A DNA stretch of 38,950 nucleotides from Octopus bimaculoides (taxonomy: Eukaryota), in assembly GCF_001194135.2 (NCBI RefSeq), contig NC_068981.1:107440788-107479737 (forward strand), in the 5' to 3' direction. The notes beneath the pieces are model-generated. The model was given only the letters and a program-made list of their open reading frames with translations, did no database searches and was not told where the DNA came from. The translations under genes were made by a program, and so were the position numbers. The stretch's first letter is position 1; each line of letters begins with the position of its first letter. This document shows positions 1 to 22,269 of this stretch, piece after piece.

Positions 1-24
1 ATACATATACACACACACATATAT

Positions 25-84
<60 letters not shown>
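1..84. repeat. (CA)n/(TA)n compound microsatellite
   Basis: Directly visible dinucleotide runs. Confidence 0.95.
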
Positions 85-87
<3 letters not shown>

Positions 88-185
88 AATATTGCCATAA
101 CCATTCAGTGATATGTCATAAAATTTCTCAAAGGATTAGGCATTGTTAATAAAATGTTTTAAAATTTTATAATGCACAAACTTAC

Positions 186-305
186 TTTTAGAGCCTCTTT
201 GCTTTTTTCCAACATTTCAGTTAAACTAGTTGAAATTTCTTTTACAATATCTTCTGTTTTCAATGGATCAAAATGTGTTGCTTGTGGATTGTATTTGTTG
301 TAGTG
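186..305 (-). CDS. CACNA2D: Internal coding exon (exon 3 equivalent) of a voltage-gated Ca channel alpha2/delta-family subunit; 120 nt, phase 0/0: HYNKYNPQATHFDPLKTEDIVKEISTSLTEMLEKSKEALK
   Basis: Seen: minus-strand acceptor ...ataatttgcatattcttttcag| (AG at 307-306), donor AAA|GTAAGT (GT at 185-184), 40 open codons, phase matches the 17801-17882 exon. Knowledge: resembles the alpha2delta segment xYxxY...LV...IExML.K.xAL (human CACNA2D1 [39 protein letters not shown], recalled). Paralogue not assignable. Confidence 0.8.
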
Positions 306-2884
306 CTGAAAAGAATATGCAAATTATAAAAATCAATAAAATTCAGTTATCTTGTTAAAAATTGTAATTATATTAAATTTAAAAACAATTTTCAATTCAT
401 ATATAAATGATTCTTGGCTCAAAAGGTCTGATTTAAATAATAATAAAAAAAAAGATATTGGAATAAAAATTATCCTGTTATTATAGCAGTTTGGCAACTG
501 TCTTCCTTAGTTGATTGAAAATTTGAGTGAAATTAGTCAGAAACAGTTCAAAAGCTGACTGGATGGTCTGTGGTTGGCAGTTTTAATCTGTCAGATGATT
601 TTACATCACCTCCTGGACTTAGATACCTTTAGCAGATTCCACTTTTTTACAAAGCATGCAGATGAGATCTCCTTTGATCTGATGATAAACCAAGATTGTA
701 GTTTATGGGGGGTTTTTTTCACCTTTTTTTTCTTTATCAGTCATAGAGGCCCTGTAAATAAGTCATGGGTAGCTGTCTTCCTTCCAGATTAAATCATATA
801 TAAACAACTATACGAAACTTCACCCTGCACAATGAATGCAATTTCTAAATATGAAAATCATGGTATCTGAGATGATCTGCTTAGAAAGTAATCCTGTCAG
901 ATTTCATTGTCCTACAATATCATTTGCTCATCCTTAGTTTCAAAATGAGTTTTCAGTTGCAACCAATACTGTGAAGGACATGTTTGCAAAAGATCAAATG
1001 GTGGAAGATGAGAGCAATAAGGTTGACAGTTAGTTTGTCTCTATGTTCAGTCGAAGTCAACCCATAGTCTATGTGGAACAGCATTGCTGACCAGATTTGA
1101 AGCAATGCTGCAAAGATGCTAGAAAAGGTGAAGCTTGGATAGCAATTCATCAACAAAGAAATATGCTATAATGAGACAATTCCCCTATCAAGAAACAAGA
1201 TCAGGCATAAAACCTGGATACAACTGTGCTGTGATTATTTAGGTTGTAAATCATTTAAACCAGAGGCAAAATGTGCAGTAGTTACAACAAAATTTCAGTA
1301 TTACTCTGATCTTAAGAATCAGTCTAAACAGATAGCCATGCCAGCAGAGCAAGATCTACTAAGTGGCCAATGCATGCCACTGATCAACTCAAGTCATATG
1401 CCAGATCATCACTGTGAAGAGAACCAACCATTGGTCTCTGTGTGGTTCATCCATCATTCTAAACCATCGGAGTTAACATTTCTCAATGATAAATGATGAG
1501 TCTCCATCTACTGATCCCAATATTTAGTCTAGTCCATTAAACAATGGATCAGAAGTTGATGAACAATCAGACAGATAAAAAATGGAAAATTTACAACCGA
1601 GATGGTAACCCTGCCAAGGTACGAAAACTGCTTGGACATCATGGAGAAAACATTTTTGTGACTATTCATCAAGTTCAACATAGGTGATATACTACAATGA
1701 ACTAGAATGACTAATTTATCCCTGCTGATCTGTAATAGTAAGGATGATGTCAGTACATGCAGCAATTAGTACCCAATCTAGTTGTGTTATTCCATGAAGA
1801 AGCTAATGCATCCTCAGGATGGAGAACAAGTTTGTCTTCTTGACTGGAGGTGATTAACTGGGTTCCCCAAATACTCATTTCGCATACACTCAAGTTTCAT
1901 AACATCTTGGAAGTTTATGTGAGATAGGTCAAATTTCTGCATCAAGACACATGTGGATTGCACTTTTCCATATAAGTAGGAATCCTCAGTGACTGTTCAT
2001 AATATGTATGGATATGGCTGCTGCTGATATTCAGGCATCTTTCTTGTGAAAGCTCCTGTATGACAGAATGCCAAGATCTACAGCTTCAAGTTTAGCAATG
2101 GAAGATACAGCTGGATGATAATAGGATGTGCCTAAAAATTTTGAAGACCAAGTTTATGAAAGTAACCCTCAGATGGACAGCAGTGTTAATGACCAAAATA
2201 TCTAATTCAACCACTTGTGTTCCAACATACAATTCAATGAGGATACTCTCAGAGATCTCTGAATGCATCTTAATGCACTATGGTTTGAGTGGAGACAAAT
2301 GTCTTATCCTTTATGATCAGAAAATATTAATGATCTTTTTGTATGTCATTGCATGTCATAGAAATTTGATACTTCATTGAACACTGGAGCTAACTAGACA
2401 TAATTGTCATAAACAATTATGTGCAGACAGTCAAAAGTGACACTCATCCTATAAGACTATATGGGCATGTGGTATGCAGTGATGAATAATCAGTAGGCCA
2501 AGATAGACTTAAGAAGCAGTCCAAATGGATGATGACCATGCAAACAGTCTAAGAAATAATAATAACAAGATCATTGAGAGAAATTGGGGGACAGGTCAGC
2601 TTTATAATTGTGGATTCCCTTGATTAAGACATGTGGAGGAAGACACGCATAATAAAGGCCCACATTTGATGGGTAATGCAGAGGATTTGATATATGAAGA
2701 TAAAAGAAAAATGGAAGCAAGCCCACCTATAGCTGACAAATTAAGAACTTCAAAATGTAAAGAAATATGGACAGAAAAAGAAAAAAAAAAAGCTTCAGAA
2801 ACTCAAATTCTATGATACCTGTATTCATTTTCAGTTATTGTCCTTCGTTTCAACAAATGTTTTCATATTTGTTAAGCTACATAT

Positions 2885-3102
2885 CCTTTATCTTTTACTT
2901 GTTTCAGTCATTAGACTGCAGCTATGCTGGGTACTGCCCTGAAAAGTTTAGTCGAACAAATCAATGCCTGTACTTTTTTTTAAAGTCTGGTGCTTATTCT
3001 ATTGGTCTCTTTTTTCTGAACCACTAAGTTATGCAGGAGTAAAGAAATCAACACCAATTGTCAAGTGGTTGTGGCTGAAGAAGGGGCAACACAAAGACAC
3101 AG

Positions 3103-3155
<53 letters not shown>

Positions 3156-3312
3156 TACTATAGGCTTCTTTCAGTTTCTGACTATCAGATCCATTCACAA
3201 GGTTTTGGTTGGACCAAGGCTACAGTAGAAGGTGCTTGCCTGAAGTGCTACACAGTGGGACTAAACCCAGAACTATGTGGTTGGGAAGCAAACTTCTTAC
3301 CACACAGCCATA
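2885..3312 (-). mobile_element. tRNA-headed SINE (family B here) with internal (CA/TA)n tract
   Basis: The right end read on minus is a tRNA-like head (ggctgtgtggtaagaagtttgcttcccaaccacatagttctgggtttagtcccactg). Related pieces recur at 9940-10010 (-), 13103-13290 (+), 16130-16280 (-) and 38778-38905 (+). Confidence 0.8.
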
Positions 3313-3412
3313 TAGATAGATTATTTACATAATTTTAAATAGACACATACAAAAAGATTTTTGAATGCCAATGACAAACCCACTGCATGAAGATAAAATA
3401 TAAAACCAGAAA

Positions 3413-3635
3413 TATTGGTTTCAAATTTTGGCTCAAGGCCAGCAATTTTAGGGAAGTGGGTAAGTCAGTTACATCAATCCTAGTGCTTGACTAGCACACT
3501 TATTTTATTGACCCTGAAAGGATGAAAGGCAAAGTCAACCTTGGCAGAATTTGAACTCAGAAAATTTAAAATCAGGAAAAATGCTGCTAAGCATTTTTTC
3601 CTGTGCAGTAACAATTCTGCTAGCTTGCTGGCTTG
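3413..3635 (-). mobile_element. SINE-like repeat (family C here)
   Basis: Core gaccctgaaaggatgaaaggcaaagtcaaccttggcagaatttgaactcag recurs at 19275-19455 (same orientation) and as the reverse complement at 5807-6020. Confidence 0.8.
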
Positions 3636-4903
3636 TAAACAATAAATATTGAATTTAAACTAGTATTTTCTCTACATTTTCTTCTATACCATTTTTTCTT
3701 ATTGTGTTGTCTATAACTCAAGCAGTAGTTTTTCATGTGCATCCCTACATTCATCAGCTATCTGCAATATTGTATCTTGCAGAAGTTGGGACACTTGTCT
3801 TATTGTTTTTTGATGTTACTTTAATGTTACTGTTTTTTATTGTGAAAACTCTTTATAGTATTAAATGGTGATTACATAGTACATGTTTTATATGAGTTGT
3901 ATGACTATATTGAAAGTATCTTGTGTAGAATGTGAGCTACATCTAGTGGCAAGTCATAGAATTGGAATCATTGAGTCAGAAGCAATTAATGAACTATTTG
4001 GTGTCAGAAGCAATTACTGAATTGTAGGAGTCAGAATTAGTAAAAATGCTGACTCTACTAAAAGGAAATGGTAATTATAACGCATTCAAATTTCTAATTT
4101 CACAGATATTAAATTAACTACTTTCTGCACTGAAAACACTCAAATCAGATTTAAGAATTACTTTGAAGGAGGTTCTGGTAGAAGCAATTATAAAAACAAA
4201 AGTTAGTAAATTTTAGATTTGTATTTTTTATTTAACCCTTATTCTGTATAACATTTAAAAAAATTTTCTGGGAATAAACTTTTTAATATTTTACAGTATA
4301 ATTTTTCTGTTCAATTAACTCTTACAAGTTAAATTCAATTAAATTTCATATTTCAGCAATGATTTAATCATGAAAAGTAAAGGTTATGTATCTAATTGAG
4401 GTCATTTCTTTTAAAACTGTCATTTGTAAAGCTCCTTTAGTTGTTGAATCTTTTTGATTTTGATGGTCTTCACAATTTTGAATTTGTAAACAGTCATTCC
4501 TAATTTTTGATGTGAACATCTAGCCAGCTGGATTAAAAAATTCATTATATGCAACATTTCGGCATTATACTTAATATAAATACGTCTTGAAAAGCAAATT
4601 TACTGCATTATTCATCCAGAGATAATATATCATATGAACGTGTTTAAAAATATATGTTGGAGGCAGAGAAAAATCATCCTAGCAGTGGCTGGTGAGAATG
4701 CTAGATGCATTTTTGTCTCCTTTGGGCATTGTCAGTAGCATGTACTCAGTCAACCACACGCTTCCATCGTATTGTTGTTTTAAAACATAGCATATCCATA
4801 AGGAATATGACAACTGGTTACAAAAAACTGAGTAACAGTTTATGAAGTCTTTCCAGCTTCAATAAAACGATAGATATAGACACACACACACACGCGCGCA
4901 CGA

Positions 4904-5378
4904 GAAAATAATGGAAACACCTAGTATCATAGCATCATAATTTTGAAATATCTATAGAACCACCAAAAGCTTGTTTATTTTTATGCTTTTTGATTTATTA
5001 TTAGTGTTGCTTAATATTCTGTTGTGTCTGGAGAGAGTAATTCTCTTTTAGTACCTTATAATTTAACACATTCACCAGTAAAATTTCCACTTCTTTTTTA
5101 TTTTTCTAAAATTATCGTTGCGTCTTGCTGCTGTTTCTTTTCAGACATCATCAGAAAGAGGTAATTAAAATTCATTAAAATGACAGATCTATCAGACTTT
5201 CAAAGAGGTCAAATTGTTGGTGCTCATATGGCAAGTGCTAGCATAATATAAACTGCCAAAATGTTTGGTGTATCAAGAAGTACTGTCTCAAAAGTAATGA
5301 CAGCCTTTGAGAAAGAGGGAAAAAACAACCTCATCGAAACAAAACTCTGGAAGAAAATCAAAACTTTCAGATAGGAAC
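4904..5378 (+). pseudogene. Tc1-like DNA transposon, 5' part: TIR-like remnant and transposase N-terminal HTH (ATG 5180; MTDLSDFQRGQIVGAHMASASII*TAKMFGVSRSTVSKVMTAFEKEGK)
   Basis: Translation shows the Tc1 paired-like HTH motif (LS.FQRGQIVG...A..FGVSRSTVSKV), with an in-frame stop and a later frameshift. Confidence 0.8.
5021..5128 (+). repeat. ~110 bp interspersed repeat inserted in the Tc1 5' region; inverted copy at 9371-9482
   Basis: tgtgtctggagagagtaattctcttttagtaccttataatttaacacattcaccagtaaaatttcc aligns by eye to the reverse complement of 9371-9482. Confidence 0.8.
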
Positions 5379-5599
5379 TGTGATGACAAAGCAATCTTCC
5401 TTAAAGGTCATTTACATGATATACAAGTTGTGATGTTGATCAGCTGATGAGACACAGACTATGAAGATAATCTATGTATCTAGACTAGCTTGAATTAGCT
5501 GGGGAAAACAGATTTTTTTTTTTTTTTTGTGTTGAGTAAATTTAATGAAGAGAGTTCAAATGTCAAAGAAGGCAATGCCATAATGATACATCAAGTTAA

Positions 5600-6227
5600 T
5601 TAACCCTTTAGTTACTATATTTCTCTTGTAATGCACTGTCTATGCTTCAATTAAATTTTAAAATAAGGAAAAATCTAGTAAAATAACTATATTATTAACC
5701 TTTTGGTCACCATATTTCTGTTGAAATTCTCTATCTTTGTTTTAATTAATTTCAAAAACGGTGAAGAATTTTGTAAAATAACTTTGCCATTATAAAACTG
5801 GTATTTAAGGCAGCGAGCTGGTAGAATTGTTAGCATGCCAGGCAAAATGCTTAGCAGTATTTCACCCATCGCTACATTCTGAGTTCAAATTCCTCCAAGG
5901 TCAGCTCTGCCTTTCATCCTTTCGGATTGATAAATTCAGTACCAGTAAAACACTGGGGTCAATGTAATTGACTACTCTCCTCCCCTCAAATTGGCTGCCC
6001 TTGAGGCAAAATTTGGAACTTCAATTGATATGGAATTTTGATGGAAGATTTTGATTTGTTGCCACACTTTCGCCACACTTTGTTGCCAAACTTTAGCTGA
6101 AATGCACTTCATAAGGTTCAATTAATTTTAAAAACAATAAAGAATTTGTTGAAATAACTTCGCTGTTATCAAGCTGGTGTTTGGAAAAGCATTTTAGCAG
6201 AAGGTTTTAATTCAGACCATTTTAAGA
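5600..6227 (+). repeat. Degenerate triplicated ~100 bp unit (two copies start ttaacc(c/t)ttt, piggyBac-terminus-like), interrupted by a SINE
   Basis: The unit ...caattaatttt(a)aaaa..aagaattt.gtaaaataact...aagctggtgtttgg recurs at about 5600, 5696 and 6075. Confidence 0.55.
5807..6020 (+). mobile_element. SINE-like repeat family C
   Basis: Reverse-complement match to 3413-3635 and 19275-19455. Confidence 0.8.
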
Positions 6228-6564
6228 CAAAGGTTCTCAACTGGGGCCATGTGATCCCTGGAGGTCCATATAAGATTTCTGAGCATCCATGCAAGCAAAA
6301 TAGTAAATTGGGGATCCATAGTAATATTCTAAAGGTGCGTGAAGAATTTTGCTTTAGATATATTTATTGCAAAAAACAGCCTGGTTTCTTTCTCTAATGT
6401 TTTACGTAGTTCAGCCTACACAAGTGAATAAGTGGAAAACAAATTAGGAATTTTGAAAGAAATATCTATAAAACTAGTTTTTAAACACTGAATAGCTGTG
6501 GGGGTCCATGAGAGAAAATAGTAATCAAAAGAGTCCATAGATAAAACATAGTTGAGAAAAACTG
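6228..6564. mobile_element. hAT (Charlie-like) non-autonomous element / MITE, 337 bp
   Basis: Termini caaaggttctcaac / gttgagaaaaactg resemble CAGTGGTTCTCAAC-type hAT TIRs; the 8-bp flanks ttttaaga / gtttaaaa resemble a decayed TSD. Confidence 0.65.
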
Positions 6565-6699
6565 GTTTAAAACATGAAGCATGCAGTCTAAAATCAAAGA
6601 CAATTTCTGGCTGTTTGGTATGGAAAGACATGCCAAGCTAAGTAAAAGTATGTTTGACCTTGCATGCAGGGTTGTCCCCTGTATATCTCTCCAGATGAG

Positions 6700-6890
6700 C
6701 ATCCCTAATCTTGTGAGCTTGTAGGTACTGGTGCCATGTAAAAAAACACCCATACTGGTGCCACATAAATGTACCTGTGCTGGTGCTGCATAAAAAACAC
6801 CCAGGCATCCGGCTGTGGAAACCATGCCAAAACAGACAAGGAGCCTTGTCAAACCATTCAGCTCATGCCAGCATAGAAAACGGACATTAA

Positions 6891-6927
<37 letters not shown>
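6700..6927 (+). mobile_element. SINE family A (RTE-type 3' tail, (GAT)n end)
   Basis: Tail catgccagcatagaaaacggacattaaat(gat)n is shared with many copies in the window. Confidence 0.8.
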
Positions 6928-6928
<1 letters not shown>

Positions 6929-7469
6929 TATATTTATAAATATATACACACACACACATACACATGTATATATATTAAGTGTATAATTAATTTATGGAAT
7001 GAAGTTCTATAAATCCAATCATATTTGTCAAAAATGGAGGAGGTAAGATGTAAAAAAGTTGTAAGAAGTTTGTTATAATATCCTAACTTATATATATATA
7101 TATATATATGTATTAATTCCAAGAAAATTAGAGGTTGTGAATCCAACCAACTGAGGGATAATATCTATCCAATATACTGCTGGTATAATACCCAATTATT
7201 AATACACAAGTGTTTTTTCATTGCATGGTAATCACATTACCAAGTGTAATAAATGGGTGAGAGTAAAGAGTTATTTTACCATTAATTTATAGAGCAATAA
7301 GAAAATGGAGGGGATCAATAGGTGGTATTCATCAACTTTTAGGCATTATATTATGTTAATTTATTTATTTATTTACTAAAAGGACAATTGTAACAATATA
7401 CATATATAATGACAAAGGTGGCTAGATGCAATAAAGCCAAAAAGGAAAAGTTCAATTATCACTAATATC

Positions 7470-7544
7470 TGTACATATATATGTGTAAATATATGCATTT
7501 ATACATATCCATAAATATGTCTACATATACACACCCATACATAC

Positions 7545-7596
<52 letters not shown>

Positions 7597-7690
7597 TTGC
7601 ATGCAAATAGGTATCCTTACACACACATGCATATATATACATACACACACACACACATACATACATACATATTCACACATACATATATTG
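7470..7690. repeat. Compound (TA)n/(CA)n/(TACA)n microsatellite
   Basis: Directly visible; source of the YIYI/HTHT ORFs. Confidence 0.95.
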
Positions 7691-7786
7691 TTCAAAACAG
7701 TTTCATTTGGATTCCGTTTCGAACAATGCATGTAACTCCCAATAAATGTGTCGAGTGCCCTTTCTTTTATTTGTCTACTCACTCAT

Positions 7787-7965
7787 CATGTAAAAAGCAC
7801 CTACTACACTCTCAGAGTGGTTGGCATTAGGAAGAGCATCCAGCTGTAGAAACATTTCCAGATCAGATTGAAGCCTTGGTGCAGCTGTTGGCTCTCTGGA
7901 CTTCAGTCAGACCATCCAACCCATGCCAGCATAGAAAACGGGAGTTAAACGATGATGATGATGAT
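7787..7965 (+). mobile_element. SINE family A
   Basis: gagtggttggcattaggaagagcatccagctgtagaaac...ccatgccagcatagaaaacgggagttaaac(gat)n. Confidence 0.85.
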
Positions 7966-8251
7966 CACAAAAGTACAGCTCCCAAAATTACTGCAGAGCT
8001 TAATGACCACTTTGAGAACCCAGTTTCCACAAAAACTGTTCACTGGGAGCTGCACAAATCCAGATTTCATGAGGAAGCAAGTGGGAGATGTTATGCAATC
8101 CGAAAACCACTACCTTCAAAAAATAAAAAAAGGGTTGCAAAGCATTTAGACAGGAGTAAAAACCTACAGAATTAGTCCCTAAAGCAGTGGAAGAATGTTA
8201 TTTTCTCAGACAAGTCAGTCATCCTTTCCCTTATTTCCGAGCACTCGCTGA
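7963..8251 (+). pseudogene. Tc1-like transposase, continuation (DHKSTAPKITAELNDHFENPVSTKTVHWELHK...AIRKPL...*SLKQWKNVIFSDKS), cut off by an N-gap
   Basis: Second HTH, the RKP linker and the W..V.(F/W)SDES-like first catalytic Asp motif of Tc1/DD34E transposases. Confidence 0.85.
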
Positions 8252-8987
8252 NNNNNNNNNNNNNNNNNNNNNNNNNNNNNNNNNNNNNNNNNNNNNNNNN
8301 NNNNNNNNNNNNNNNNNNNNNNNNNNNNNNNNNNNNNNNNNNNNNNNNNNNNNNNNNNNNNNNNNNNNNNNNNNNNNNNNNNNNNNNNNNNNNNNNNNNN
8401 NNNNNNNNNNNNNNNNNNNNNNNNNNNNNNNNNNNNNNNNNNNNNNNNNNNNNNNNNNNNNNNNNNNNNNNNNNNNNNNNNNNNNNNNNNNNNNNNNNNN
8501 NNNNNNNNNNNNNNNNNNNNNNNNNNNNNNNNNNNNNNNNNNNNNNNNNNNNNNNNNNNNNNNNNNNNNNNNNNNNNNNNNNNNNNNNNNNNNNNNNNNN
8601 NNNNNNNNNNNNNNNNNNNNNNNNNNNNNNNNNNNNNNNNNNNNNNNNNNNNNNNNNNNNNNNNNNNNNNNNNNNNNNNNNNNNNNNNNNNNNNNNNNNN
8701 NNNNNNNNNNNNNNNNNNNNNNNNNNNNNNNNNNNNNNNNNNNNNNNNNNNNNNNNNNNNNNNNNNNNNNNNNNNNNNNNNNNNNNNNNNNNNNNNNNNN
8801 NNNNNNNNNNNNNNNNNNNNNNNNNNNNNNNNNNNNNNNNNNNNNNNNNNNNNNNNNNNNNNNNNNNNNNNNNNNNNNNNNNNNNNNNNNNNNNNNNNNN
8901 NNNNNNNNNNNNNNNNNNNNNNNNNNNNNNNNNNNNNNNNNNNNNNNNNNNNNNNNNNNNNNNNNNNNNNNNNNNNNNNNNNNNNNN
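8252..8987. other. Assembly gap (N run); others at 9651-9872, 23845-23875, 35713-35722, 37590-37709
   Basis: Runs of n. Confidence 1.
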
Positions 8988-9164
8988 GAAATTGTTGACA
9001 CCAAAAACATGTAGAATAGCAGCTTAGAATTAGAATGAAATCCTAACATTGCCCCCAAAATGACTTAGACTTATGGTTGTAAAGAACTGGATGATGAATG
9101 AGGCTGTAGAGGTATCTATATTGCAGAAAGTAAGGTACGTGGAAAGAAAGCTGCTTCATTGGGA

Positions 9165-9320
9165 ACACACAAACACATGAGTATGCAGAATACATACATA
9201 CAATCGTACACACATACATACATATATACATATGCACACACACATACATGCATGCATATGCATACATATATGTATGTGTATGCATACACACACTGACCCA
9301 CACACATGCACACAAACAAA
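9165..9320. repeat. Degenerate (CA/TA) microsatellite
   Basis: Directly visible. Confidence 0.9.
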
Positions 9321-10029
9321 CAAAAAGAATGCAGCTTGAATAACAGAATCAACAACTACTGAAAAGGTTGCAAGATGCAACAAAAAATTTAGAAAAATAA
9401 ATAAATGAATGGAAATTTTACCGGTGAGTGTGTTAAATTATAAGGCACTAAAAGAGAATAACTGTCCTCAGACACAACAAAATATGCTTCGACACACAAA
9501 CTCACATAAAGAATCTTGCAAACCAAATCCCCAAACGAAATTATAATTTTAAATTTTTGTAATACAAATATGTCAATGAAAATAAAGTTTAGTTGGTAGC
9601 GAAAATAGTACTGAATCTTTTGATATCCCATATGTCAAAATCGGCAACTCNNNNNNNNNNNNNNNNNNNNNNNNNNNNNNNNNNNNNNNNNNNNNNNNNN
9701 NNNNNNNNNNNNNNNNNNNNNNNNNNNNNNNNNNNNNNNNNNNNNNNNNNNNNNNNNNNNNNNNNNNNNNNNNNNNNNNNNNNNNNNNNNNNNNNNNNNN
9801 NNNNNNNNNNNNNNNNNNNNNNNNNNNNNNNNNNNNNNNNNNNNNNNNNNNNNNNNNNNNNNNNNNNNNNNNATATAGCCAAAAGTCACGCACCAAAACA
9901 TTTGACATCTTATCTGTGTTATGTTATTATTCATATTGTTCATGTATACTCTTTTACTCTTTTACTTGTTTCAGTCATTTGACTGTGGCCATGCTGGAGC
10001 ACCGCCTTTGGATGTATGTATGTATTCAT

Positions 10030-10135
10030 CATTATTTTATTTATTTTATTCAATTTTAGAAAAATTGAAGCATATCTTTGTCAATTCCAGAGCTTATTGA
10101 ACTTATTTTGTGCATGACTTTTGGCCCACCCTGTA
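10030..10135. mobile_element. Tc1/mariner-type terminus (solo TIR-like end)
   Basis: Ends gacttttggcccaccctg|ta, i.e. TA|CAGGGTGGGCCAAAAGTC on minus, a typical Tc1/mariner TIR start; partner end not found. Confidence 0.45.
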
Positions 10136-10929
10136 TACAGATTGTGTCTGCATATATATCATACCATATATATATATGCATGCATGGATAGATACACACA
10201 CAAAGGATGATAAGAATTCAGTCAGTATTCTATTACTTCCTTATCAACATCCAATTAAAGCTGCAGTTGTTTTTGTTGATGGTGTGTAGCCGCCAGATCA
10301 GCCCTTATTTAACAGTCCTATAGTACACAGGCATTTGGCCAAATGAGGAGGTGCAGCCCATAGATCATAACTGCTTAGCCGAGGACCAAACTCTACATTC
10401 TGACATGCTGTAATAACTCTTTATGAGAGTAGTCTAAAATACACTGTATTTTCTCCAGTGTCCAATTTATTTCTATTCATCCAGAGATTCTGCTTGTATC
10501 AGAGTAGGTAATGTGAACTCAGAGTATGATAATTGTTGCTGCTTTGCATTTGGTAGTGGTGTGCATTCCAGTAGTGTTGGGACATGGAGACTACTGATGT
10601 TGCAGTTATTTCAGTGAGTATGAGCTAAGTGGGAGAGATGTTGTAGTTATACCATGTGTGTATATATGCTTAAAGGTAGCTTTTTGCTTTCATATAGTGA
10701 CTGAAATTGTAGTACATTGAAGCTTGCTGCCTGAAGCAGAGAGCATTATAATCTTATTTCTGACAATGAGATTGGTTTTCAATATTAGACTCTTCTTTAA
10801 TAGTCTTTTCTTTCTAATTTTCGACATTTGTTACAAATTTAAATGTCTCCAGGGTCAACTTTGCCTTTTGTCTTTAGAAAGTTGATAAAATAGTTATTAG
10901 TCAAGTTTTATTCATTCATTTTTGTTGGG

Positions 10930-11450
10930 TGAACAAGTTTGGAGGAAGAGCTGTGATTTTAGCTTTGCAAGCTGATATTGAACTAGTTAACATTATTCTT
11001 GAATAGTTTCAAGTTGGCAGCCAAGGGGAAAAAAACAAAAACATGCTACACAGCTAACATTTTGGGAAGAAAGAACTAAGAAAAGAGGTTGGTGAAATAC
11101 CTTTCACAAAACAAACACTCATAGACTTTGCTGATGTCAAGTGCAACAATACTGTTTCCATCAAATTTCTCAAGGATAATGTAATCATTAAAAAAAAAGA
11201 TATCCAAAGTGTTGGGGAGCATGCGTGTTAATGAGCATCTTCACTATAATTGGCAGGATCAGAGGGGTTGCTTTTCTTATTAATAAGACATACTGTAGCA
11301 TTTCTAAAGATCAAGATAAATCCAAGAGAAAGGTTAAAAAGTTTGTTGAAGTGTAGCTTTGGAGTGCCTTGTTTGACAGTAATGGAAGGGTCAGGGCATG
11401 TGGCCTTGATCATTTGAAGCAACAGAAGATGTGTTTGCACTTGGCATGTA
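10930..11450 (-). pseudogene. Decayed Jockey/CR1-group LINE reverse-transcriptase fragment
   Basis: Minus-strand translation contains KATCPD..KQGTPKL..KLFNLSL..NATVCLINKKSNPSDPANY and VALDISKVYE (cf. KA.GPD, LFNLSL, DP.NYRPI, ALDISKAFD). Confidence 0.65.
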
Positions 11451-12437
11451 TAAGGTGGTGAGATGGATACAGTAGAAAGGGATAGTTTTAGAGGAGATTT
11501 ACCTTGTATGTGAATGTGAAGCTTGATGAAAAGTATTGCTTATAGAATCCTTATGGTTTGTGGAGATATAGATATAGTAGTTCTGAGGTAATGAACAAAA
11601 TATTAGTCATTGACTAATAATATTTCAATTATTTCAGCAAGTATAGTAAACAACACTGGACATTTATGCATGAGCTTATCAGTGAACCAAATATCACATG
11701 TAAAGTAGTGATGGGAGAATTGTGAAGTAAATATACAATGATGAACACTGGGTGACATAGAAAACTAGAATTGTTGAGAGACTAAATTACTCAGCAATCA
11801 TTATCAGCTAATAAATATCTATTTATGATCAATTTGGGTTGAAGAGGATTTAGAAAGATGATAACCCATATAGAATTGCAATGGAATTATGTCTCAAGAC
11901 ATTTGAACATTCTTCTTACAAGTGTTAATTGCATTATAAAATATCATCTAGCAACACAAAGTTAGAATTAATCAATAATTAGTAAAGATAATAGAAAAGA
12001 CTGGCATTTGCTAACATTGTTATTAACAATTGGCCATATATTGTTAAATATTTAATAGACTAATGAAGCTACTTTTCATTTTAATGGTTAGAGCAGCAGA
12101 ACAATCTCTCACAAATAATCAAAACTAAAAATTACAGATGAAAATACAGCTTTTTTTTTTACAAAAGATTTCTCATTACTTCATCATCATCATATAGGAA
12201 TATAAATTAATCAAATATAATCATAAAATATTTTAAAATTTATATATAAAATTCTGTTCAAATATAAATACTTTTTTTCCTTTCTATAATATAATCTTAG
12301 AAAGTAAAATTTTGATCAAAGTAAAAACAAAATACACAAGTTTTGATTAGCGTGGTATCTCACTGAGTTTTAAGGAGAGGACCAAAATATGTGACATATT
12401 GCTCCACTCAAGAAGACATGTCTACCACAACTGAATT

Positions 12438-12573
12438 GATTAAGAAGGGCATCCATCTGTAGAAACCAAACCAAAACAGACTACGGAACCTGGTGCAGCC
12501 CCTGGCCTTGCTAGTTCCTACCAAGCTGACCAACCAATGCCAACATGAGAAATGGACATTGAATGATGATGAT
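12438..12573 (+). mobile_element. SINE family A (3' part)
   Basis: aagaagggcatccatctgtagaaacc...ccaatgccaacatgagaaatggacattgaat(gat)n. Confidence 0.8.
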
Positions 12574-12669
12574 AAATAAAAACATACACACATACAGAAG
12601 AGATGTAGGATACAGGAGGCTCATCAGTTTGTCTTGTCCTTGACAAGACAATTCACTAGTATTGCTGTT

Positions 12670-12861
12670 AAGTATACTCTCTAAACTGGTTAATGTTAGG
12701 AAGGGCATCCAACTATAGAAAACATGCTAATGGGAGAGTGAGATAGATGTGGTCTCTCAACCATGTCTAGTAGAGCAGTAACTCTGATCAAATGTAACTT
12801 GACCTGTAATAAATAATCCAGCCAGAGCCAGCATGGAAAATAGACATATGAAGATGATGAT
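12670..12861 (+). mobile_element. SINE family A-related (diverged)
   Basis: tgttaggaagggcatccaactatagaaaac...gccagcatggaaaatagacatatgaagatgatgat. Confidence 0.65.
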
Positions 12862-13102
12862 AAATATATTGATAATATTTAGAGGTGACTGCCTCTAAAT
12901 ACTATGAATGCTCACATATGATACCATATTTTTCCATGCCAACATTACTTTGATATATGATGAAGCTAACAAACCTCACTGGTACTAACAAGTATGCTAT
13001 TTTTATTAAAGAATAAAAGTTGTACCTCTTAAATCCACCACTCCATGATACCACAATTCCTATGATCCAACATGATTTGAATTTGTTTTAGACTTTACAT
13101 TA

Positions 13103-13290
13103 GGAGCAAGCATGGTTGTGCAATTAAGAAGTTCTTTTCCTAACTGTGTGGTTTCAGGTTCAGCACCATTGTGCTTCACTTTGAGTGTCTTCATCTTTTG
13201 AGTGTCCCAGGCTAACCAAAGTGCTGTGAGTGGATTTGGTAGACAGAAACTCAAAGAAACTCATGTGTGTATGTATGCATGTTCACATAC
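13103..13290 (+). mobile_element. SINE family B 5' half (tRNA-like head)
   Basis: Reverse complement of the 3150-3312 segment. Confidence 0.7.
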
Positions 13291-14159
13291 ACACATGTTT
13301 GTCTGAATTTACATTTGCATAATATCACACAATACATACAGCAAGGTTTTAGTCTCTTTCTCCAGGCAATAAAGCATTCATTGGCTTTGTGCCTTCAAAG
13401 ATATGTGAAATAAAAAGTCTCTTACTTGAAAATTTGATACGGGTTAGAGATAGGAAGGGTATCTGGCTGTAAAACAATACCTTGATAACATATTTATTTA
13501 ATCCATACTATCATGGAAAAATGAATTACACAAGCAAAAATCCTGTTTGAAAGCCTTAGTTGCATTATTTCTTATTCTAAGCTTTCTTGTAACTTTGATA
13601 AAACATCAGTACATACATGTAGACTGAGATGGTAAAAATATGTTCACTAAGTGGCTTCCATTTGGAATGAATTTCTGGGTTTTTTTTTTTACTTTTTCTA
13701 TGGTCTGATAATGATTAGGTCCCAAAGTTACCACATTTATTAAGTTGAATATATAATGGTATACAAGCTTATTTAGCATATAAACATATTTCATTACTTA
13801 CTTAGTAGGTCTTCAGTGAGAACTTTATACATACAATGTTTAATTTTCTTAAGATCTATTAGGTTTCTTCTATCACATATAATTTTCAATTTATACATGT
13901 TCCACCATTTCAAATTACATTGTTTTTCTCACAATCAGAAATATTGATGTTCATCTTTAAAAGCTTAGGATGCTAAATACATTACTCTTTGCTTCCTCTG
14001 TCTCATTTCTATTTGGCTTGCAAGATGTAATAGTATTTCCAAACACTGTTCTGTTGTTAGATTATATGTGTATAATTTGCATCTATTCAATTGATTTGCA
14101 TCAGGCTCATAAGAGAATCTTTCATTTTATTTATGATGGTAGATATTCATTCTACAAGA

Positions 14160-14345
14160 TGTAGATGGTTTTGTTTAGTCCCAGGTCAACTTGTGAGAGC
14201 AAAGCTATGATCAAAAGCATTCAAGGCATTGACTATCTCATCTCTTTTTTGAGGATAACATTACCCAATGTATCATTTTCCAAGACAGTAGAATACGATC
14301 TGATGGAGAGCTGGTTCCATGAATGACCACATAGCAGTTCCATCA
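14160..14345. mobile_element. Interspersed repeat (family D here); related pieces at ~18330-18427 and ~30868-30990
   Basis: Shared motifs aagac(a/g)gtag..t.(c/t)gat(c/t)tga.ggag and tttaac.ccag.tca.cc(c/t)tga seen by eye across copies. Confidence 0.5.
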
Positions 14346-15893
14346 GTGATTCATTCTGCAAGATCATACATTTTAGGGATTTGAGGGAAATATTTTTCCT
14401 AATATTTAAAGGAATCTGATATCTTATTTCATAATATAACAACAATAGGATTTGTAATTTGGATCGATTATACTTATACACAGTTGGACAACTGAAGGAT
14501 GTCTCATCTAAAAACTATCCAACACAAAACTCTAAGTAACAAACAAGTATGATACTGCATGTAACACTAGAAAATACTAAAGGTGAATTGGACCTCTCTG
14601 TTTTTTTAAACAATAGATTACTTCAGTTCAGTGTTGAGGTTAGTTCCTTTTTAGAATAATTACAAATTCCTCTATACTAGTAACAAGAAATCCACTTGTC
14701 TCATATATATAGCTTGTAATAAATCATTTTTTACATTCTTCCTTCCTTAAGGTTCTCAACACATAAATCCTACAAATAATTAAGAATATGCTAGAACCAT
14801 TATTTCTGAGGTCAATACATCATTTCCATTAGTATTTTAGGATAGTATCTGAGTTTTATTCTTGGTGGCAATTTGTGTTGTTGCTAAGTGTCTAACAGAC
14901 ACAGTAGTTTCTTTGTTATTAAAATAGCTAGCAAGCACAAGCATAGCAAGGGTTTGTTGACAAGAGCTCCAACTAAAAGGTCTGTTTTGTTCATGTGACA
15001 GAACTGGTCCACAATTATACAACTACCAAATACGGAAGTCTCCTAGATAAGCTACAAGAATACTTCAGAAGTCTCTCATGAAATCACAGCATTAGTTGCA
15101 GTGCACAACTGGATTAAGTAGAGAACATCAGAGAGAACAGTTTGCCAAACTGAATAGGCAATCCACTTGACTTTAAAGATTTGTTTTTCAAGTTACTCCA
15201 CTAAATCTCTCAGCTTATCCATTACCCTACAAGTTATAATTAGCGGTTCTACTACATGAAAACTTTTGTTACAGAAAAATTCATGCACTTCCTGTCTCAT
15301 AAAATAGGCATACCAAAAATAGAAAGCAGCTGAGAGAGACAATGATTATTGATGCAGTTATATTTATAAAAGGAAACCTAGAATATTAATCCATAATATT
15401 AAGAAAATATCGATTGTTGTCAGTACTAGGAAGAGACCATTTGAAGTTGATATTTAGTAACCTTTATGAGATGTGTTTTATTAAGTTGATGAAAATTTTG
15501 ATTTACATTCTACACATCCTTCACACAAACCAACCACTTGTGAGACATCCTCTATGGATAATGGTTTGGTTTCAGATCTTGAAAGACTGGAAAGAAGTAA
15601 TCCCTGTATGGCATCATGAAGTTCAGCTAGAAAGTTTCAGCAAATTTCTTGTTAAAACTGTAATCAGGTTGAACTGTAAGGTAATTTTAAAAGGTCTTAA
15701 ACCAATGTTTTCATTCTCAAGTTGTCATTGAGGAACTGGGACTGGCAACATGCCACTAGATCTTAGCTGAAGATCCATTATAAGTTGGTTAACTTACATA
15801 GAGTACTCATAATTTGGTTACATTAAGTGCAGGGTCTCTGAATAACTTTTAGGTAACTGTTGTGCAATAGAAAGATACTTGATCTTACAACAA

Positions 15894-16280
15894 TCATTAT
15901 TATCATCGTTTTAATGTCCACTTTTCCATGCTTGCACAAATCAGATGAAATTCTTTGAGGCAGATTTTCTATAGCCAGATACTCTTTCTGTTGCCAACCC
16001 CTCAACTGCTTCTAGATGAAGTAATATTCCTTCAAACTTGAACAGCACAATGACTGGACATGATTACATATTTGCATGGCGGTGATGGCTGTTTATGATT
16101 AAAGTGATGGCAAGACAAAGACACATACATATCTCAGACTTCTTCTAGTTTTAATTTACCAAATCTACTCACAAGGCTTTAGTCAGCTTGGGACTATAGT
16201 AGAAAGTACTTGCTCAAGGCGCTGTACAGCAAGACTGAACTCAAAGCCACATAGTCGCAAAGTAGTTTTCTTAACCACAC
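15894..16280 (-). mobile_element. SINE with family-A-type tail (15894-16003) plus family-B-type head (16130-16280)
   Basis: atcatcgttttaatgtccacttttccatgcttgc is the reverse complement of the family A tail; 16130-16280 matches the family B head at 3150-3312. Confidence 0.65.
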
Positions 16281-16875
16281 AACATTATGACATTTATTCA
16301 ATAGCACAAACTATGCAAATAACATCCATACAACAAAACTCAGCAAAACTTGTTAATCCAAGTGAATGACATCTGCCATCATCACAAGACTGCATACAAT
16401 ATGAGCCATAGAAAGTGATGAAGGTGAATCTGGTCTTTCTTTCTTTCTTTCATAATAGAATAATTTAATTCATTGTTTGGGTAAATTCATTTTAAGAATG
16501 ACAAGTTCTTTCTCATTAGTAAGAACAAACCAACTGGTTCAATCCTTGTAGCTTACAGTAAATAATTTCCCCAACATACACCTTTTAAATCTGATAACTT
16601 TTCCAACATATGCTAGTAAAACTTTAACCAACACAACATTTGGAAAGTGAAAAATTAAAAAAGAAAAAATACAGGATTAAAACTGACACATCTATAGAAC
16701 TACTTTGGAAATAACTAAACATATTTCAGCAAGTGTTACAAATTTAAATATATATACAAATCTGGGAAGTTTATGAATTGATCTTTCTGATTATTTACCC
16801 CTAACTAATTTCCTTGGACTCCAACAGAATGAAATATTTCATATAAGCTGATAGTGCCCTTTACTGCAAAAAGCA

Positions 16876-17536
16876 GATATATCGGATCTAGTTCAAAACA
16901 GGGGTATCAGTATTTTCTTAACGAAACACTAACGAAACACTTTGAAAGTTGGGACACTGGTAGAATGTGTCATATAAAACATCTTTTACTCTTAGTCTTC
17001 TTAACAAAAAAACGTACATCGCAAGCTATTCCATGTTAAAGTTGTTGTGTTTCTGTAATTTCAACCAATCACTGACGTCTATTCAGCTGTATAGAGTTAC
17101 TGCTGGCCGGTCATAAAAATGTTATTCCCTGTGACATATTTCATCCGGTTTAATCGTAATTTATACGCATATATTATTTATATAATATATTACGCTGTGC
17201 GTATCTATGTGTGTAACAATTTTAGAGTTTGGATTCTAGAGTTAAGGTTAGTTTTAGGGTTAGGGTTAACAGTCTAGTTAGGGTTAGGGTTAGGGGATTA
17301 ATACGATATACACCGTTACAGTGCTGTTTTCAACTGAATAGACGTCAGTGATTAGTAGAAATTATCGAAATAAGACAATTTTTTACATGAAATAAATTCG
17401 AATACAAAAATTTTTTCCTGTTCTATAACACAAAATAGATAAGTATACAAAGTTTGAAAGTCTTTCGGTACCAAAAACACAACATAAAACATAAATGAAA
17501 ACTGGTGCCCCTGTTTTGAACAAGATCCGATATATC
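16876..17536. mobile_element. Fold-back / long-TIR non-autonomous DNA element with internal TTAGGG repeats
   Basis: Outer IR 16876-16917 vs 17497-17536 (gatatatcggatc(t/a)(a/t)gttcaaaacagggg); inner IR ~17028-17089 vs ~17331-17395 (aatcactgacgtctattcag); centre 17241-17296 has (ttaggg)n. Confidence 0.75.
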
Positions 17537-17800
17537 CACTTAAAATTTCATTACCCTTAAGTGTTTTATATACCAATCATCTTTTTTTTTTTTTTTGTTA
17601 CAGAATGTCATGTTTGAAACTAATTTCTGTTGAGATATATCAAGTTTATTGAGGCAATGTGACTTGCAGAAGATACCAATTCTATTTCATGGTAGATATT
17701 AAACAACATTACTAGAATCACAATGAAATTTAATTTTGTAATTAAAGGGTTAAAGCTCACTCAGGTGTTATAAAAATGTAGTACTAAAAAAAAAACATAC

Positions 17801-17882
17801 CTGTTGTAGTATATGGTGCCCGGTAACATTTGTCATGTTTGATTTTAATCTATCTTCAAGATTACTTCCCCATTTTGAAATT
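17801..17882 (-). CDS. CACNA2D: Internal coding exon (exon 2 equivalent) of the same alpha2/delta-family gene; 82 nt, starts phase 2, ends phase 0: (x)ISKWGSNLEDRLKSNMTNVTGHHILQQ
   Basis: Seen: acceptor cattaatcccactctgtttattttatttccag| with a TTAAT branch-point-like motif, donor CAG|GTATGT, open frame. Knowledge: matches the alpha2delta pattern (V/I)xxW...L......x(S/T)GxxxLQxxY. As I recall, human CACNA2D1 exon 2 is also 82 nt with phase 2/0 (to be verified). Confidence 0.8.
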
Positions 17883-18444
17883 CTGGAAATAAAATAAACA
17901 GAGTGGGATTAATGTTTTGCATCAGCAGAATACATGTGGAAAGATATGAAATTTTAAGAAGTGTTTGTCTCAGTCTGTCTGATGGCCACGGAGAACATAT
18001 AGGCATAACAAACGTAACAAATCACATGAAACAAGTAAGTTCCAATTATGTAATGGAAGTAATGTATGTAAGATTTCTATCTCAGCCAATACAAGGTTAT
18101 TTTTGTTTTCCACTTTTTAAATTTTTCAATTAACTGCATAACAAAACTTTACACACAATTAAAGTACATAGCAAAAAAAGTTAGTTATGTGGAAAGGTGG
18201 AGCTCTTACAAGTCTCTCTTGTTGTCATAATTAATTTTATACATATACAGATAATTGTTAGGTTTTTATTACTAAATTTTTCATGTAATACATTTTTAGA
18301 AATATTATATTTAGGACTGCATTATTCTACACACCCATTCTTTTTTCCTTTAAGATGATGGGTGCAATCTGAGGGAGATTTGGTTGCTATTTCAAATAGG
18401 TGAAGTAACTGCATGGAGATCCCCTCACTGTATTGAGTGACATA

Positions 18445-18715
18445 TATTTACAAGAATGTATGTGTGTGTGAGTGTGCATCTGTGTGTAAGAATATGCATA
18501 TGTATAAGAGTGTGTGTATGCATGAGTGCATGTGTTTGAGTGTGTATGCATGAATGCATGTATACTTGAGTGTATGCATGTGTGCATATGAATGTGTATA
18601 TATGTGCATAAGTGTGCAAAAATATGCACACAAAAATGCATGTATGTATGCTATACTGTGTGTGTATATATAAATGCCTATACATACAGAAGATATTAAT
18701 GTGTATGTGTATATT
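18445..18715. repeat. Degenerate (TG/TA/TGCA) low-complexity tract
   Basis: Directly visible; source of the HTH-rich ORFs. Confidence 0.9.
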
Positions 18716-19274
18716 TTTGCATAGTAGACTTAATCTACCACCCAGTTCAACAACACCACCTGTATATTTTGAAGTGTTTTTATTATAAGTTTTTCACAAT
18801 CTTTATCATTCCTCAAGTCACAACCAAAACCAATATTATGCAACCAATACCACAAAATAACCTAGCCAACATCTAACACAAACAAAATCACTGTAACAGT
18901 GACTCAAAATTATCCCCACCATTACTAAAATAATGAGAATCAAAATTATGGGCATTAAACCAGCAGTTCTCGAACTAAAAAATACCAGGCTCCCTCAAAA
19001 AATACAGAAGTGAAATAGTTTTGACACACTCTCCTCACTTCATTAATGAGACTAAATAGTTTGCATCCATATAATTTATTTTACCCCACCATGGTGTTGG
19101 ACAAGTTTAAGATGTTAGAAACTATCTTCATTTGATTAAACATGACAATTTGTCTGTGTCCTTTTCAATCCTCACAGGCTTCCCTATGAGAAATTCTGGT
19201 TTTAACAATCGAGGAAGAAAAGTAAAGAAAGATGAATAGTGTGATAAAGTGTTTAAATATGCTGAGTAATTAAT

Positions 19275-19455
19275 TGTTTCTACTATAGGCACAAGGTCTG
19301 AAATTTGGGAGACGGGAGTAGTCAATAACATTGAATTTAGTGCTGAACATATTTATTTTATCAACCCTGAAAGGATGAAAGGTAAAGTCAACCTTGGTGG
19401 ATTTTGAACTCAGAGTGTAATGAGTCAGAAGAAATGCTGTTAAGCATTTTATTCA
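19275..19455 (-). mobile_element. SINE-like repeat family C
   Basis: Matches 3413-3635. Confidence 0.8.
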
Positions 19456-19764
19456 ATGTTGCTACATGTCCATACTTACAGATAAGCAATAAAACCTACA
19501 AAGTTACAACAAATAATAACCTTTGCAATCTCTAAATAGCAAGCTCACATTGCGAGAACTACATCTATTTATGCTTTCTCTTCAAAGCCAGAAACTACTT
19601 CAGCTGATATTAGTTGCTGACTCTCTGCAAAGCTTACATGGTTACTGATTACATTGGATTGCTGATAATATACCTGGAATGGTATTGCTGCTGCTGCACA
19701 CAGACATAAAAAGACTGATAAGTAAAGACTCACTACAACTATTCCTTTAAACTAATAAGCTGTG

Positions 19765-19925
19765 TACCACTTCTGCCAAAGTCCAGGCAGAAGACTGCAC
19801 CAGACTTTCGTGTCTGTTTTGGCAAGGTTTTTACAACTGGATGTCCTTCCTAACACCAATCACCTAACAGAGTGGACCGAGTACTTTTTATGTGGTACAA
19901 GCTCAGGTGAGGTCAGTTTGGCATG
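19765..19925 (-). mobile_element. SINE family A (antisense to the + copies)
   Basis: ggtttttacaactggatgtccttcctaacaccaatcac...actttttatgtggtac is the reverse complement of the family A body. Confidence 0.75.
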
Positions 19926-20760: not shown

Positions 20761-20769
20761 TGTACTACA

Positions 20770-22190: not shown

Positions 22191-22269
22191 TGTAAATGTT
22201 ATCACATTCCTTGTTCTGTCACTGTTCCTTTGCCTCATTACATTTTCTTTCTATTTCAGTTTATTATTG

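What the first reader, a model, noticed from the sequence alone, without database searches (positions are those of the whole stretch)
186..17882. Hidden calcium-channel alpha2/delta gene: two tiny exons 17.5 kb apart, invisible to the ORF track
Seen: two minus-strand exons with good acceptors and donors join in frame (…HILQQ|HYNKY…). Knowledge: the peptide fits the alpha2delta N-terminus preceding the VWA_N region. The 82-nt phase-2/0 exon followed by a ~120-nt phase-0/0 exon matches my recollection of human CACNA2D1 (82 and 117 nt). Inference: exon architecture is conserved from cephalopod to human while the introns expanded with TEs. This makes the whole window a neural-gene intron.
Basis: partly seen in the sequence, partly recalled or inferred. 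Interest (0 to 1): 0.7.

Follow-up and report, generated by a model that had tools for sequence, protein, structure and literature searches.

The report
Two annotated octopus calcium-channel alpha2delta exons
The two tiny minus-strand exons are real: they are exons 2 and 3 of the octopus calcium-channel alpha2/delta-2 gene. That gene is already fully annotated in public databases, so the reading is correct but ordinary.

Summary
Observation confirmed at the exact coordinates. Window 17801-17882 (-) is 82 nt in phase 2/0. Window 186-305 (-) is 120 nt in phase 0/0. Both have canonical AG/GT borders and join in frame to a 67-aa peptide.

That peptide matches residues 50-116 of all six RefSeq isoforms of Octopus bimaculoides 'voltage-dependent calcium channel subunit alpha-2/delta-2' (XP_052825055.1 and five others) at 100%. 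It matches the Argonauta hians orthologue at 75% (E=5.6e-24 against 1.8 billion proteins). The carrier proteins have the full VWA_N/VWA/dCache_1/VGCC_alpha2 domain set.

In another cephalopod, an mRNA contig has the same junction spliced, and genomic contigs show the intron there. The three intron positions and phases are the same in Lottia (82/141 nt), amphioxus (82/117 nt) and a fish alpha2delta-1a gene (82/117 nt). Intron 2 is 1.2-3.4 kb in those species and about 17.5 kb here.

Both flagged assembly gaps lie deep inside intron 2 and cannot affect the frame. Exon 1 and exon 4 are not in the window. The window therefore holds the end of intron 1, exon 2, intron 2, exon 3 and the start of intron 3 of a 204-kb gene.

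The gene is hidden from an ORF track but not from annotation. Verdict: already known, low interest.

The parts
17883..38950 (-). 3' part of intron 1 of the alpha2/delta-2 gene (at least 21,068 nt; exon 1 lies beyond the window's high end)
   Evidence: tblastn with residues 1-49 of the octopus protein (MASATS...PSKKL) finds nothing credible in the window. The intron ends in the acceptor ttatttccag at 17883-17892. It contains reverse-transcriptase fragments and three short assembly gaps.
17801..17882 (-). Exon 2, 82 nt, phase 2/0. It supplies the third base of the Leu49 codon plus residues 50-76 (ISKWGSNLEDRLKSNMTNVTGHHILQQ), with two N-glycosylation sequons (NMT, NVT).
   Evidence: 100% identical to XP_052825055.1 and the five other isoforms. 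80% nucleotide identity to another cephalopod, confined to the exon and the first bases of the donor. Same 82-nt exon in Lottia, amphioxus and fish.
306..17800 (-). Intron 2, 17,495 nt as assembled, of which 958 are N in two gaps (8252-8987, 9651-9872)
   Evidence: Donor gtatgt at 17795-17800 and acceptor ttttcag at 306-312. No alpha2delta-like coding piece inside. Tc1-like remnant and interspersed repeats present. The orthologous intron is 3,048 nt in Lottia, 3,429 nt in amphioxus and 1,154 nt in fish.
186..305 (-). Exon 3, 120 nt, phase 0/0, residues 77-116 (HYNKYNPQATHFDPLKTEDIVKEISTSLTEMLEKSKEALK)
   Evidence: 100% identical to the six RefSeq isoforms. The orthologous exon is 141 nt in Lottia and 117 nt in amphioxus and fish, with boundaries in the same alignment columns.
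1..185 (-). First 185 nt of intron 3 (donor gtaagt at 180-185); exon 4 (NSVNIAEAV...) lies beyond the window's low end
   Evidence: The protein continues ...EALK|NSVNIAEAV, whereas the DNA reads through as VSLCII.... No hit to the exon-4 peptide in the window.

Best explanation
The window is a piece of the Octopus bimaculoides gene for the voltage-gated calcium-channel auxiliary subunit alpha2/delta-2-like, or of the same gene in a very close relative. The gene is on the minus strand. The window holds constitutive coding exons 2 (82 nt) and 3 (120 nt), separated by a roughly 17.5-kb intron and flanked by parts of introns 1 and 3.

After splicing, the two exons encode residues 50-116 of the precursor. 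This is the helical stretch that follows the signal peptide and precedes the VWA domain in the extracellular alpha2 part.

By homology with vertebrate alpha2delta-1/2, the mature protein would be a glycosylated, membrane-anchored extracellular subunit. It would bind the pore-forming Cav alpha1 subunit through its VWA MIDAS site and raise channel surface density and current.

Shown here: the exons, their frame and phases, their identity to the annotated protein, and the conservation of the intron positions. Inferred: the species, expression in neurons, and the biochemical role.
For: - Coordinates, frame and splice sites.
- A full HMMER search gives Argonauta hians alpha-2/delta-2 (GAB1597394.1) at E=5.6e-24, 75% identity, query 1-67 against residues 4-70 without gaps. 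That protein carries VGCC_alpha2, VWA_N, VWA and dCache_1.
- The peptide sits at residue 50 of all six O. bimaculoides RefSeq isoforms XP_052825055/56/62/63/64/65 at 100% identity.
- The gene spans 204 kb on a 199.9-Mb chromosome of GCA_001194135.2.
- The full-length protein has an N-terminal hydrophobic signal-like segment, the motif DVRRRPWY, the MIDAS motif DTSGS and a hydrophobic C-terminus.
- A transcript contig of another cephalopod (L004, SRR25158153) carries the junction ...AAACAG|CATTATAAT... as a continuous ORF. Genomic contigs with the same exon sequence (L005, L006) continue ...AAACAG|gtgtgt.
- Intron positions and phases are identical in Lottia, amphioxus and fish alpha2delta-1a.
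- A profile of these N-termini hits human and rabbit alpha2delta-1 chains of solved Cav complexes at E=1.6e-23.
- An AlphaFold2 model of the N-terminus (mean pLDDT 66) predicts helices 47-66, 70-81 and 93-128.
Against: - The peptide alone gives nothing against PDB sequences or Pfam, so its link to vertebrate alpha2delta needs intermediate sequences.
- The octopus chromosome DNA could not be fetched because the gene range is too long. Identity of locus and species therefore rests on 67 identical residues, not on a DNA match.
- No RNA-seq of this species was examined. The RefSeq isoforms are computed models.
- The structure model is of modest confidence, and only its secondary structure is used.
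Confidence: 0.96

Rival explanations
1. Chance: two open segments with splice-like borders that happen to join in frame, with no gene there.
For: Splice-like open segments are common in this AT-rich window: 43 candidates at about 21 places pass a crude filter. The peptide alone has no PDB or Pfam match.
Against: E=5.6e-24 against 1.8e9 proteins with gapless 1-67 coverage. 100% identity to six annotated isoforms. Exon-limited nucleotide conservation in another cephalopod, and a spliced mRNA there. The same exon borders in three other phyla or classes.
Confidence: 0.005
2. The window comes from a different, closely related octopus such as O. sinensis or O. vulgaris. The public model of that species lacks the N-terminal half, so there the exons would be unannotated.
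For: The O. sinensis entry XP_036357085.1 in the same 90% cluster is only a 540-aa C-terminal piece. The 2015 O. bimaculoides model A0A0L8HVV3 (698 aa) also lacked these exons. The species of the window was not shown by a DNA match.
Against: The 67 residues are identical to O. bimaculoides. O. sinensis and O. bimaculoides already differ at about 13 of 540 residues in the better conserved C-terminal part (my count from the sequences printed), so zero differences in this less conserved stretch would be unlikely. Estimated-length N runs of 10-736 bases fit a short-read scaffolded assembly such as the O. bimaculoides one; this last point rests on my own knowledge.
Confidence: 0.03
3. A duplicated, non-functional copy of exons 2-3 (a pseudo-exon pair) rather than the expressed locus.
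Against: Both exons are intact and have canonical splice sites, strong polypyrimidine tracts and zero amino-acid differences from the annotated product. The product is on record on a single contig. The spacing and order fit a large-intron gene.
Confidence: 0.01

Closest known systems
Octopus bimaculoides voltage-dependent calcium channel subunit alpha-2/delta-2, RefSeq isoforms X1-X6 (XP_052825055.1, XP_052825056.1, XP_052825062.1 to XP_052825065.1)
   Same: Residues 50-116 are identical to the joined peptide in all six isoforms. This is the same gene, as far as could be tested.
   Different: Nothing detectable. The window holds only 67 of 1,050-1,078 residues. An older model of this gene (A0A0L8HVV3, 698 aa) lacked them.
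Argonauta hians alpha-2/delta-2 isoform X4, partial (GAB1597394.1)
   Same: 75% identity over the whole peptide without gaps, and the same domain set.
   Different: The Argonauta model is truncated at the N-terminus. It starts a few codons before the exon-2 equivalent, so its exon 1 is not annotated.
Human and rabbit alpha2delta-1 (CACNA2D1) in solved Cav1.1, Cav1.2 and Cav2.2 complexes, e.g. PDB 7MIX chain D, 5GJV chain F, 8FD7
   Same: The N-terminal profile aligns the octopus exon-2 and exon-3 segments to human [27 protein letters not shown] and [39 protein letters not shown]. The octopus full-length protein keeps the RRR motif and the DxSxS MIDAS motif. The fish alpha2delta-1a orthologue has the same intron positions, with exons of 82 and 117 nt.
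   Different: Only about 20% identity in this stretch, undetectable by single-sequence phmmer. Exon 3 is one codon longer in octopus. Intron 2 is about 15 times longer than in the fish gene.
Lottia gigantea LOTGIDRAFT_238600 and other molluscan alpha2delta-2-like genes
   Same: 46-48% identity overall. An identical 82-nt phase-2/0 exon 2, and a phase-0/0 exon 3 ending at ...ALK.
   Different: Lottia exon 3 is 141 nt (a 7-codon insert). Its intron 2 is 3.0 kb and its whole gene is 30 kb, against 204 kb in octopus.

Membership tests
Voltage-gated calcium channel alpha2/delta subunits (CACNA2D family) | Sequence homology of the encoded peptide to the N-terminus of family members | tested here: met
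   E=5.6e-24 to Argonauta alpha2/delta-2. 100% to O. bimaculoides alpha2/delta-2. A profile of the aligned N-termini hits PDB alpha2delta-1 chains at E=1.6e-23; that profile includes a fish alpha2delta-1a.
Voltage-gated calcium channel alpha2/delta subunits (CACNA2D family) | Domain set VWA_N + VWA + Cache + VGCC_alpha2 in the protein that carries the peptide | tested here: met
   Pfam on the Argonauta orthologue: VGCC_alpha2 3.2e-69, VWA_N 2.3e-30, VWA 3.6e-14, dCache_1 1.4e-10. The same precomputed domains are listed for the octopus protein. All of these lie outside the window.
Voltage-gated calcium channel alpha2/delta subunits (CACNA2D family) | Intact MIDAS motif DxSxS in the VWA domain, and the RRR motif typical of the alpha2delta-1/2 clade | tested here: met
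   DTSGS at residue 274 and DVRRRPWY at residues 252-259 of XP_052825055.1. Both are outside the window. All named vertebrate hits among the best 120 are alpha2delta-1 or alpha2delta-2.
Voltage-gated calcium channel alpha2/delta subunits (CACNA2D family) | N-terminal signal peptide and C-terminal hydrophobic (GPI-anchor signal) segment | tested here: inconclusive
   Hydrophobic 15-mers are present at residues 13-27 and near the C-terminus. No dedicated signal-peptide or GPI predictor was available. Both segments are outside the window.
Voltage-gated calcium channel alpha2/delta subunits (CACNA2D family) | Family-typical gene structure at the 5' end: 82-nt phase-2/0 exon, then a phase-0/0 exon of about 117-141 nt | tested here: met
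   Octopus 82/120, Lottia 82/141, amphioxus 82/117, fish alpha2delta-1a 82/117. All borders fall in the same alignment columns. Human exon sizes were not read directly.
Voltage-gated calcium channel alpha2/delta subunits (CACNA2D family) | The exon 2-exon 3 junction is actually spliced in mRNA | tested here: inconclusive
   Shown in a related cephalopod: transcript contig L004 against genomic L005 and L006. For the window's own species only computed RefSeq models were seen, with no reads.
Voltage-gated calcium channel alpha2/delta subunits (CACNA2D family) | Association with Cav alpha1 subunits, enhancement of channel trafficking and current, and neuronal expression | not testable with these tools
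   Needs expression data and electrophysiology.

The most novel reading that the evidence does not exclude
The window may come from an octopus species or assembly whose public alpha2/delta-2 model is truncated at the N-terminus, as are O. sinensis XP_036357085.1 and the 2015 O. bimaculoides model. In that case the two exons would be a real annotation gain. They would also show that the phase-2/0/0 intron positions at the 5' end of alpha2delta genes date back to the bilaterian ancestor.
Probability: 0.04. Interest if true: 0.15.

Novelty: already known. Interest (0 to 1): 0.08.

Why it matters
It matters little beyond quality control. It shows that reading raw sequence can recover short exons of a large-intron animal gene that an ORF track misses. 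The recovered gene, its six isoforms and these very residues are already in RefSeq.

The conserved intron positions from mollusc to chordate, together with a 5- to 15-fold longer intron in octopus, fit what is generally known about slowly evolving gene structures and repeat-rich cephalopod genomes. They do not open a new question.

Tried and rejected
- **Peptide against PDB sequences and Pfam:** phmmer against PDB sequences gave no hit at E<=10. Pfam gave only a sub-threshold HTH_TANC1 match, taken as chance.
- **Word-indexed protein search with the peptide:** nothing found, although the database holds an exact match. This is a miss of the index, not biology.
- **P0002 and P0003 from the HMMER search:** repetitive proteins that match only a low-complexity part of exon 3. 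Rejected as irrelevant.
- **Exon 1 and exon 4 in the window:** tblastn found neither.
- **Octopus gene DNA:** could not be fetched because the 204-kb range is too long. The exact isoform X3 is not on record.
- **Vertebrate genes:** two fish genes were too long and one was not on record. The Pseudorasbora alpha2delta-1a gene worked.
- **Rfam, tRNA and bacterial promoter/terminator scans:** nothing relevant.
- **Base composition:** flat at about 31-35% G+C, apart from the 2-kb block that contains the two gaps.
- **Literature:** no paper in the library gives human CACNA2D1 exon sizes or treats this octopus gene. One O. vulgaris paper mentions a CACNA2D3-type orthologue only.
Full report
**What is in the sequence.** On the minus strand, window 17801-17882 is an 82-nt open segment preceded by ...ctctgtttattttatttccag and followed by gtatgt. 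Window 186-305 is a 120-nt open segment preceded by ...gcatattcttttcag and followed by gtaagt. Exon A is read from its second base. Joined, the two give 67 codons without a stop: ISKWGSNLEDRLKSNMTNVTGHHILQQ|HYNKYNPQATHFDPLKTEDIVKEISTSLTEMLEKSKEALK. The phases are 2/0 and 0/0.

**Is it more than chance?** The splice signals alone do not settle this. A crude filter asked for an AG with a pyrimidine-rich tract, a good GT donor and an open frame of 60-300 nt. It passes 43 candidates at about 21 places in the window. The two claimed exons are among the four with the best donor score.

The peptide alone found nothing in PDB sequences, in Pfam or in the word-indexed protein search. The exhaustive HMMER search of 1.84 billion representatives gave a clear answer. 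P0001 scored E=5.6e-24 at 75% identity, with query 1-67 aligned to residues 4-70 without a gap. P0001 is GAB1597394.1, 'voltage-dependent calcium channel subunit alpha-2/delta-2 isoform X4, partial [Argonauta hians]'. It carries VGCC_alpha2 (3.2e-69), VWA_N (2.3e-30), VWA (3.6e-14) and dCache_1 (1.4e-10).

**The gene is already annotated.** A search with P0001 returned the Octopus bimaculoides protein XP_052825062.1. Its cluster holds isoforms X1-X6. All six contain the 67-aa peptide at 100% identity, starting at residue 50. The gene is on record in GCA_001194135.2, spanning 204 kb of a 199.9-Mb chromosome.

Older or partial models lack the N-terminal half: A0A0L8HVV3 (698 aa) and O. sinensis XP_036357085.1 (540 aa). 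So 'hidden' is true for an ORF track, because the exons are 27 and 40 codons long and the ORF listing does not show them. It is not true for current annotation. The species assignment rests on the 67 identical residues and on the style of the assembly gaps. I could not fetch the chromosome DNA to confirm it.

**What the window covers.** tblastn with the full octopus protein hits only these two exons. Residues 1-49 (signal-peptide exon, MASATS...PSKKL) and the next exon (NSVNIAEAV...) are not in the window. On the minus strand the window therefore reads as follows:
- 17883-38950: at least 21 kb of intron 1
- 17801-17882: exon 2
- 306-17800: intron 2
- 186-305: exon 3
- 1-185: the first 185 nt of intron 3

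The split codon at the intron 1 boundary is xx|A, which fits Leu49 (TTA or CTA) of the annotated protein.

**Assembly gaps.** The two flagged gaps (736 and 222 N) are inside intron 2, more than 7.9 kb from either exon. Three further short gaps are in intron 1. Because the frame is joined by splicing, continuity across the gaps is irrelevant to it. Only the intron length (17,495 nt) is uncertain.

Nothing constitutive is hidden in the gaps. The two segments abut directly in all six octopus isoforms, in Argonauta and in a third cephalopod's mRNA. Gap 1 follows a decayed Tc1/mariner-like frame (...STAPKITAELNDHF...WKNVIFSDKS...) that runs straight into the N run. The gap therefore probably marks a repeat that failed to assemble.

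**Evidence for splicing and selection.** A 4,294-nt transcript contig from another cephalopod (L004, run SRR25158153; species not determined) carries a continuous 1,065-aa ORF. In it, the exon-2 equivalent ends ...AAACAG and is followed directly by CATTATAATAGA..., the exon-3 equivalent. Genomic contigs that carry the identical exon-2 sequence (L005, L006; presumably the same or a very close species) continue ...AAACAG|gtgtgtatttt. The 146-aa read-through product P0004 reflects that intron. Nucleotide similarity between the window and these contigs (about 80%) is confined to the exon plus the first bases of the donor. The flanks do not align. For the window's own species I saw only the computed RefSeq models, not reads.

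**Conservation of exon architecture.** I mapped the proteins onto genomic loci of three other animals:

| Species and gene | Exon 2 | Exon 3 | Intron 2 |
|---|---|---|---|
| Octopus (this window) | 82 nt | 120 nt | 17,495 nt |
| Lottia gigantea | 82 nt | 141 nt | 3,048 nt |
| Branchiostoma lanceolatum | 82 nt | 117 nt | 3,429 nt |
| Pseudorasbora parva, alpha2delta-1a | 82 nt | 117 nt | 1,154 nt |

All have AG/GT borders and phases 2/0 and 0/0. In a multiple alignment, all three intron positions fall in the same columns.

A profile of that alignment hits human and rabbit alpha2delta-1 chains of solved channel complexes at E=1.6e-23. It aligns the two octopus segments to a 27-residue and a 39-residue human stretch. 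The claim 'architecture conserved, introns expanded' is thus supported for mollusc, cephalochordate and teleost.

The role of TEs is supported only qualitatively:
- an RVT_1 reverse-transcriptase ORF at 37788-38819 (E=1.5e-27)
- the Tc1-like remnant
- a ~180-bp interspersed repeat with at least 8 copies across both introns
- microsatellites

**How it most likely works.** After removal of the signal peptide encoded by exon 1, exons 2 and 3 encode the start of the extracellular alpha2 polypeptide. This stretch carries two N-glycosylation sequons. An AlphaFold2 model of modest confidence (mean pLDDT 66) predicts it as helices 47-66, 70-81 and 93-128.

From my own knowledge of the cryo-EM structures, not tested here: in solved vertebrate alpha2delta-1 the equivalent N-terminal helices pack against the first double-Cache module next to the VWA domain.

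The full-length octopus protein keeps the DTSGS MIDAS motif, the RRR motif of the gabapentin-binding alpha2delta-1/2 clade and a hydrophobic C-terminus. All named vertebrate hits among its best 120 are alpha2delta-1 or alpha2delta-2. It is therefore most likely a conventional auxiliary subunit that promotes surface expression and current of Cav1/Cav2 channels. Neuronal expression is an inference from the family.

**Verdict.** There is no sign of anything unusual in the exons or their splice sites. Interest is low.

Noticed in passing
window 7787-8251 (+): Decayed Tc1/mariner-like transposase frame (weak Pfam HTH_Tnp_Tc3_2 match...WKNVIFSDKS...) that runs directly into the 736-N assembly gap at 8252-8987. 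The gap probably marks a repeat that failed to assemble.
   Followed up: partly
window 6842-6907, 7787-7964, 12440-12578, 19783-19919 (inverted), 23915-24092, 25054-25190, 26196-26374, 32413-32587: An interspersed repeat of about 180 bp, with at least 8 copies 74-87% alike, spread over introns 1 and 2. One copy overlaps the 5' part of the Tc1-like fragment, so it may be a MITE-like derivative.
   Followed up: partly
window 36717-37163 (+) and 37788-38819 (+): A 343-aa ORF with a reverse-transcriptase domain (RVT_1, E=1.5e-27). Upstream is a 148-aa ORF with no Pfam match; its sequence looked to me like the tail of a reverse transcriptase. A 120-N gap separates them. These look like retroelement fragments antisense to the host gene in intron 1.
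   Followed up: partly
window 9-77, 7546-7588, 9190-9266, 18512-18587, 35634-35712: AC, TA and CA/TG-rich microsatellites. They produce the long 'IYIYIY/CVCVCV' pseudo-ORFs in the ORF list, and two of them flank assembly gaps.
   Followed up: no
outside the window: octopus alpha2/delta-2 isoforms X1-X6 (P0127, P0129, P0005, P0126, P0124, P0128): The isoforms differ by a 13-aa insert (GYFLPTPGLKPTD) and by three alternative 26-28-aa segments after ...AIRSKVQ; isoform X6 has none of the three. Two of the alternatives also occur in the other cephalopod's transcripts (P0006 vs P0133). This suggests conserved mutually exclusive exons in the Cache region.
   Followed up: no
tool behaviour: The word-indexed protein search found no candidate for the 67-aa peptide, although the database holds proteins containing it exactly. 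A negative from that tool on a short query is not evidence of absence.
   Followed up: yes
Argonauta hians GAB1597394.1 (P0001), residues 1-3: The partial Argonauta model starts 'ICS' just upstream of the exon-2 equivalent. This resembles a read-through of the acceptor region (the window reads ISR there), so its exon 1 is probably unannotated.
   Followed up: no
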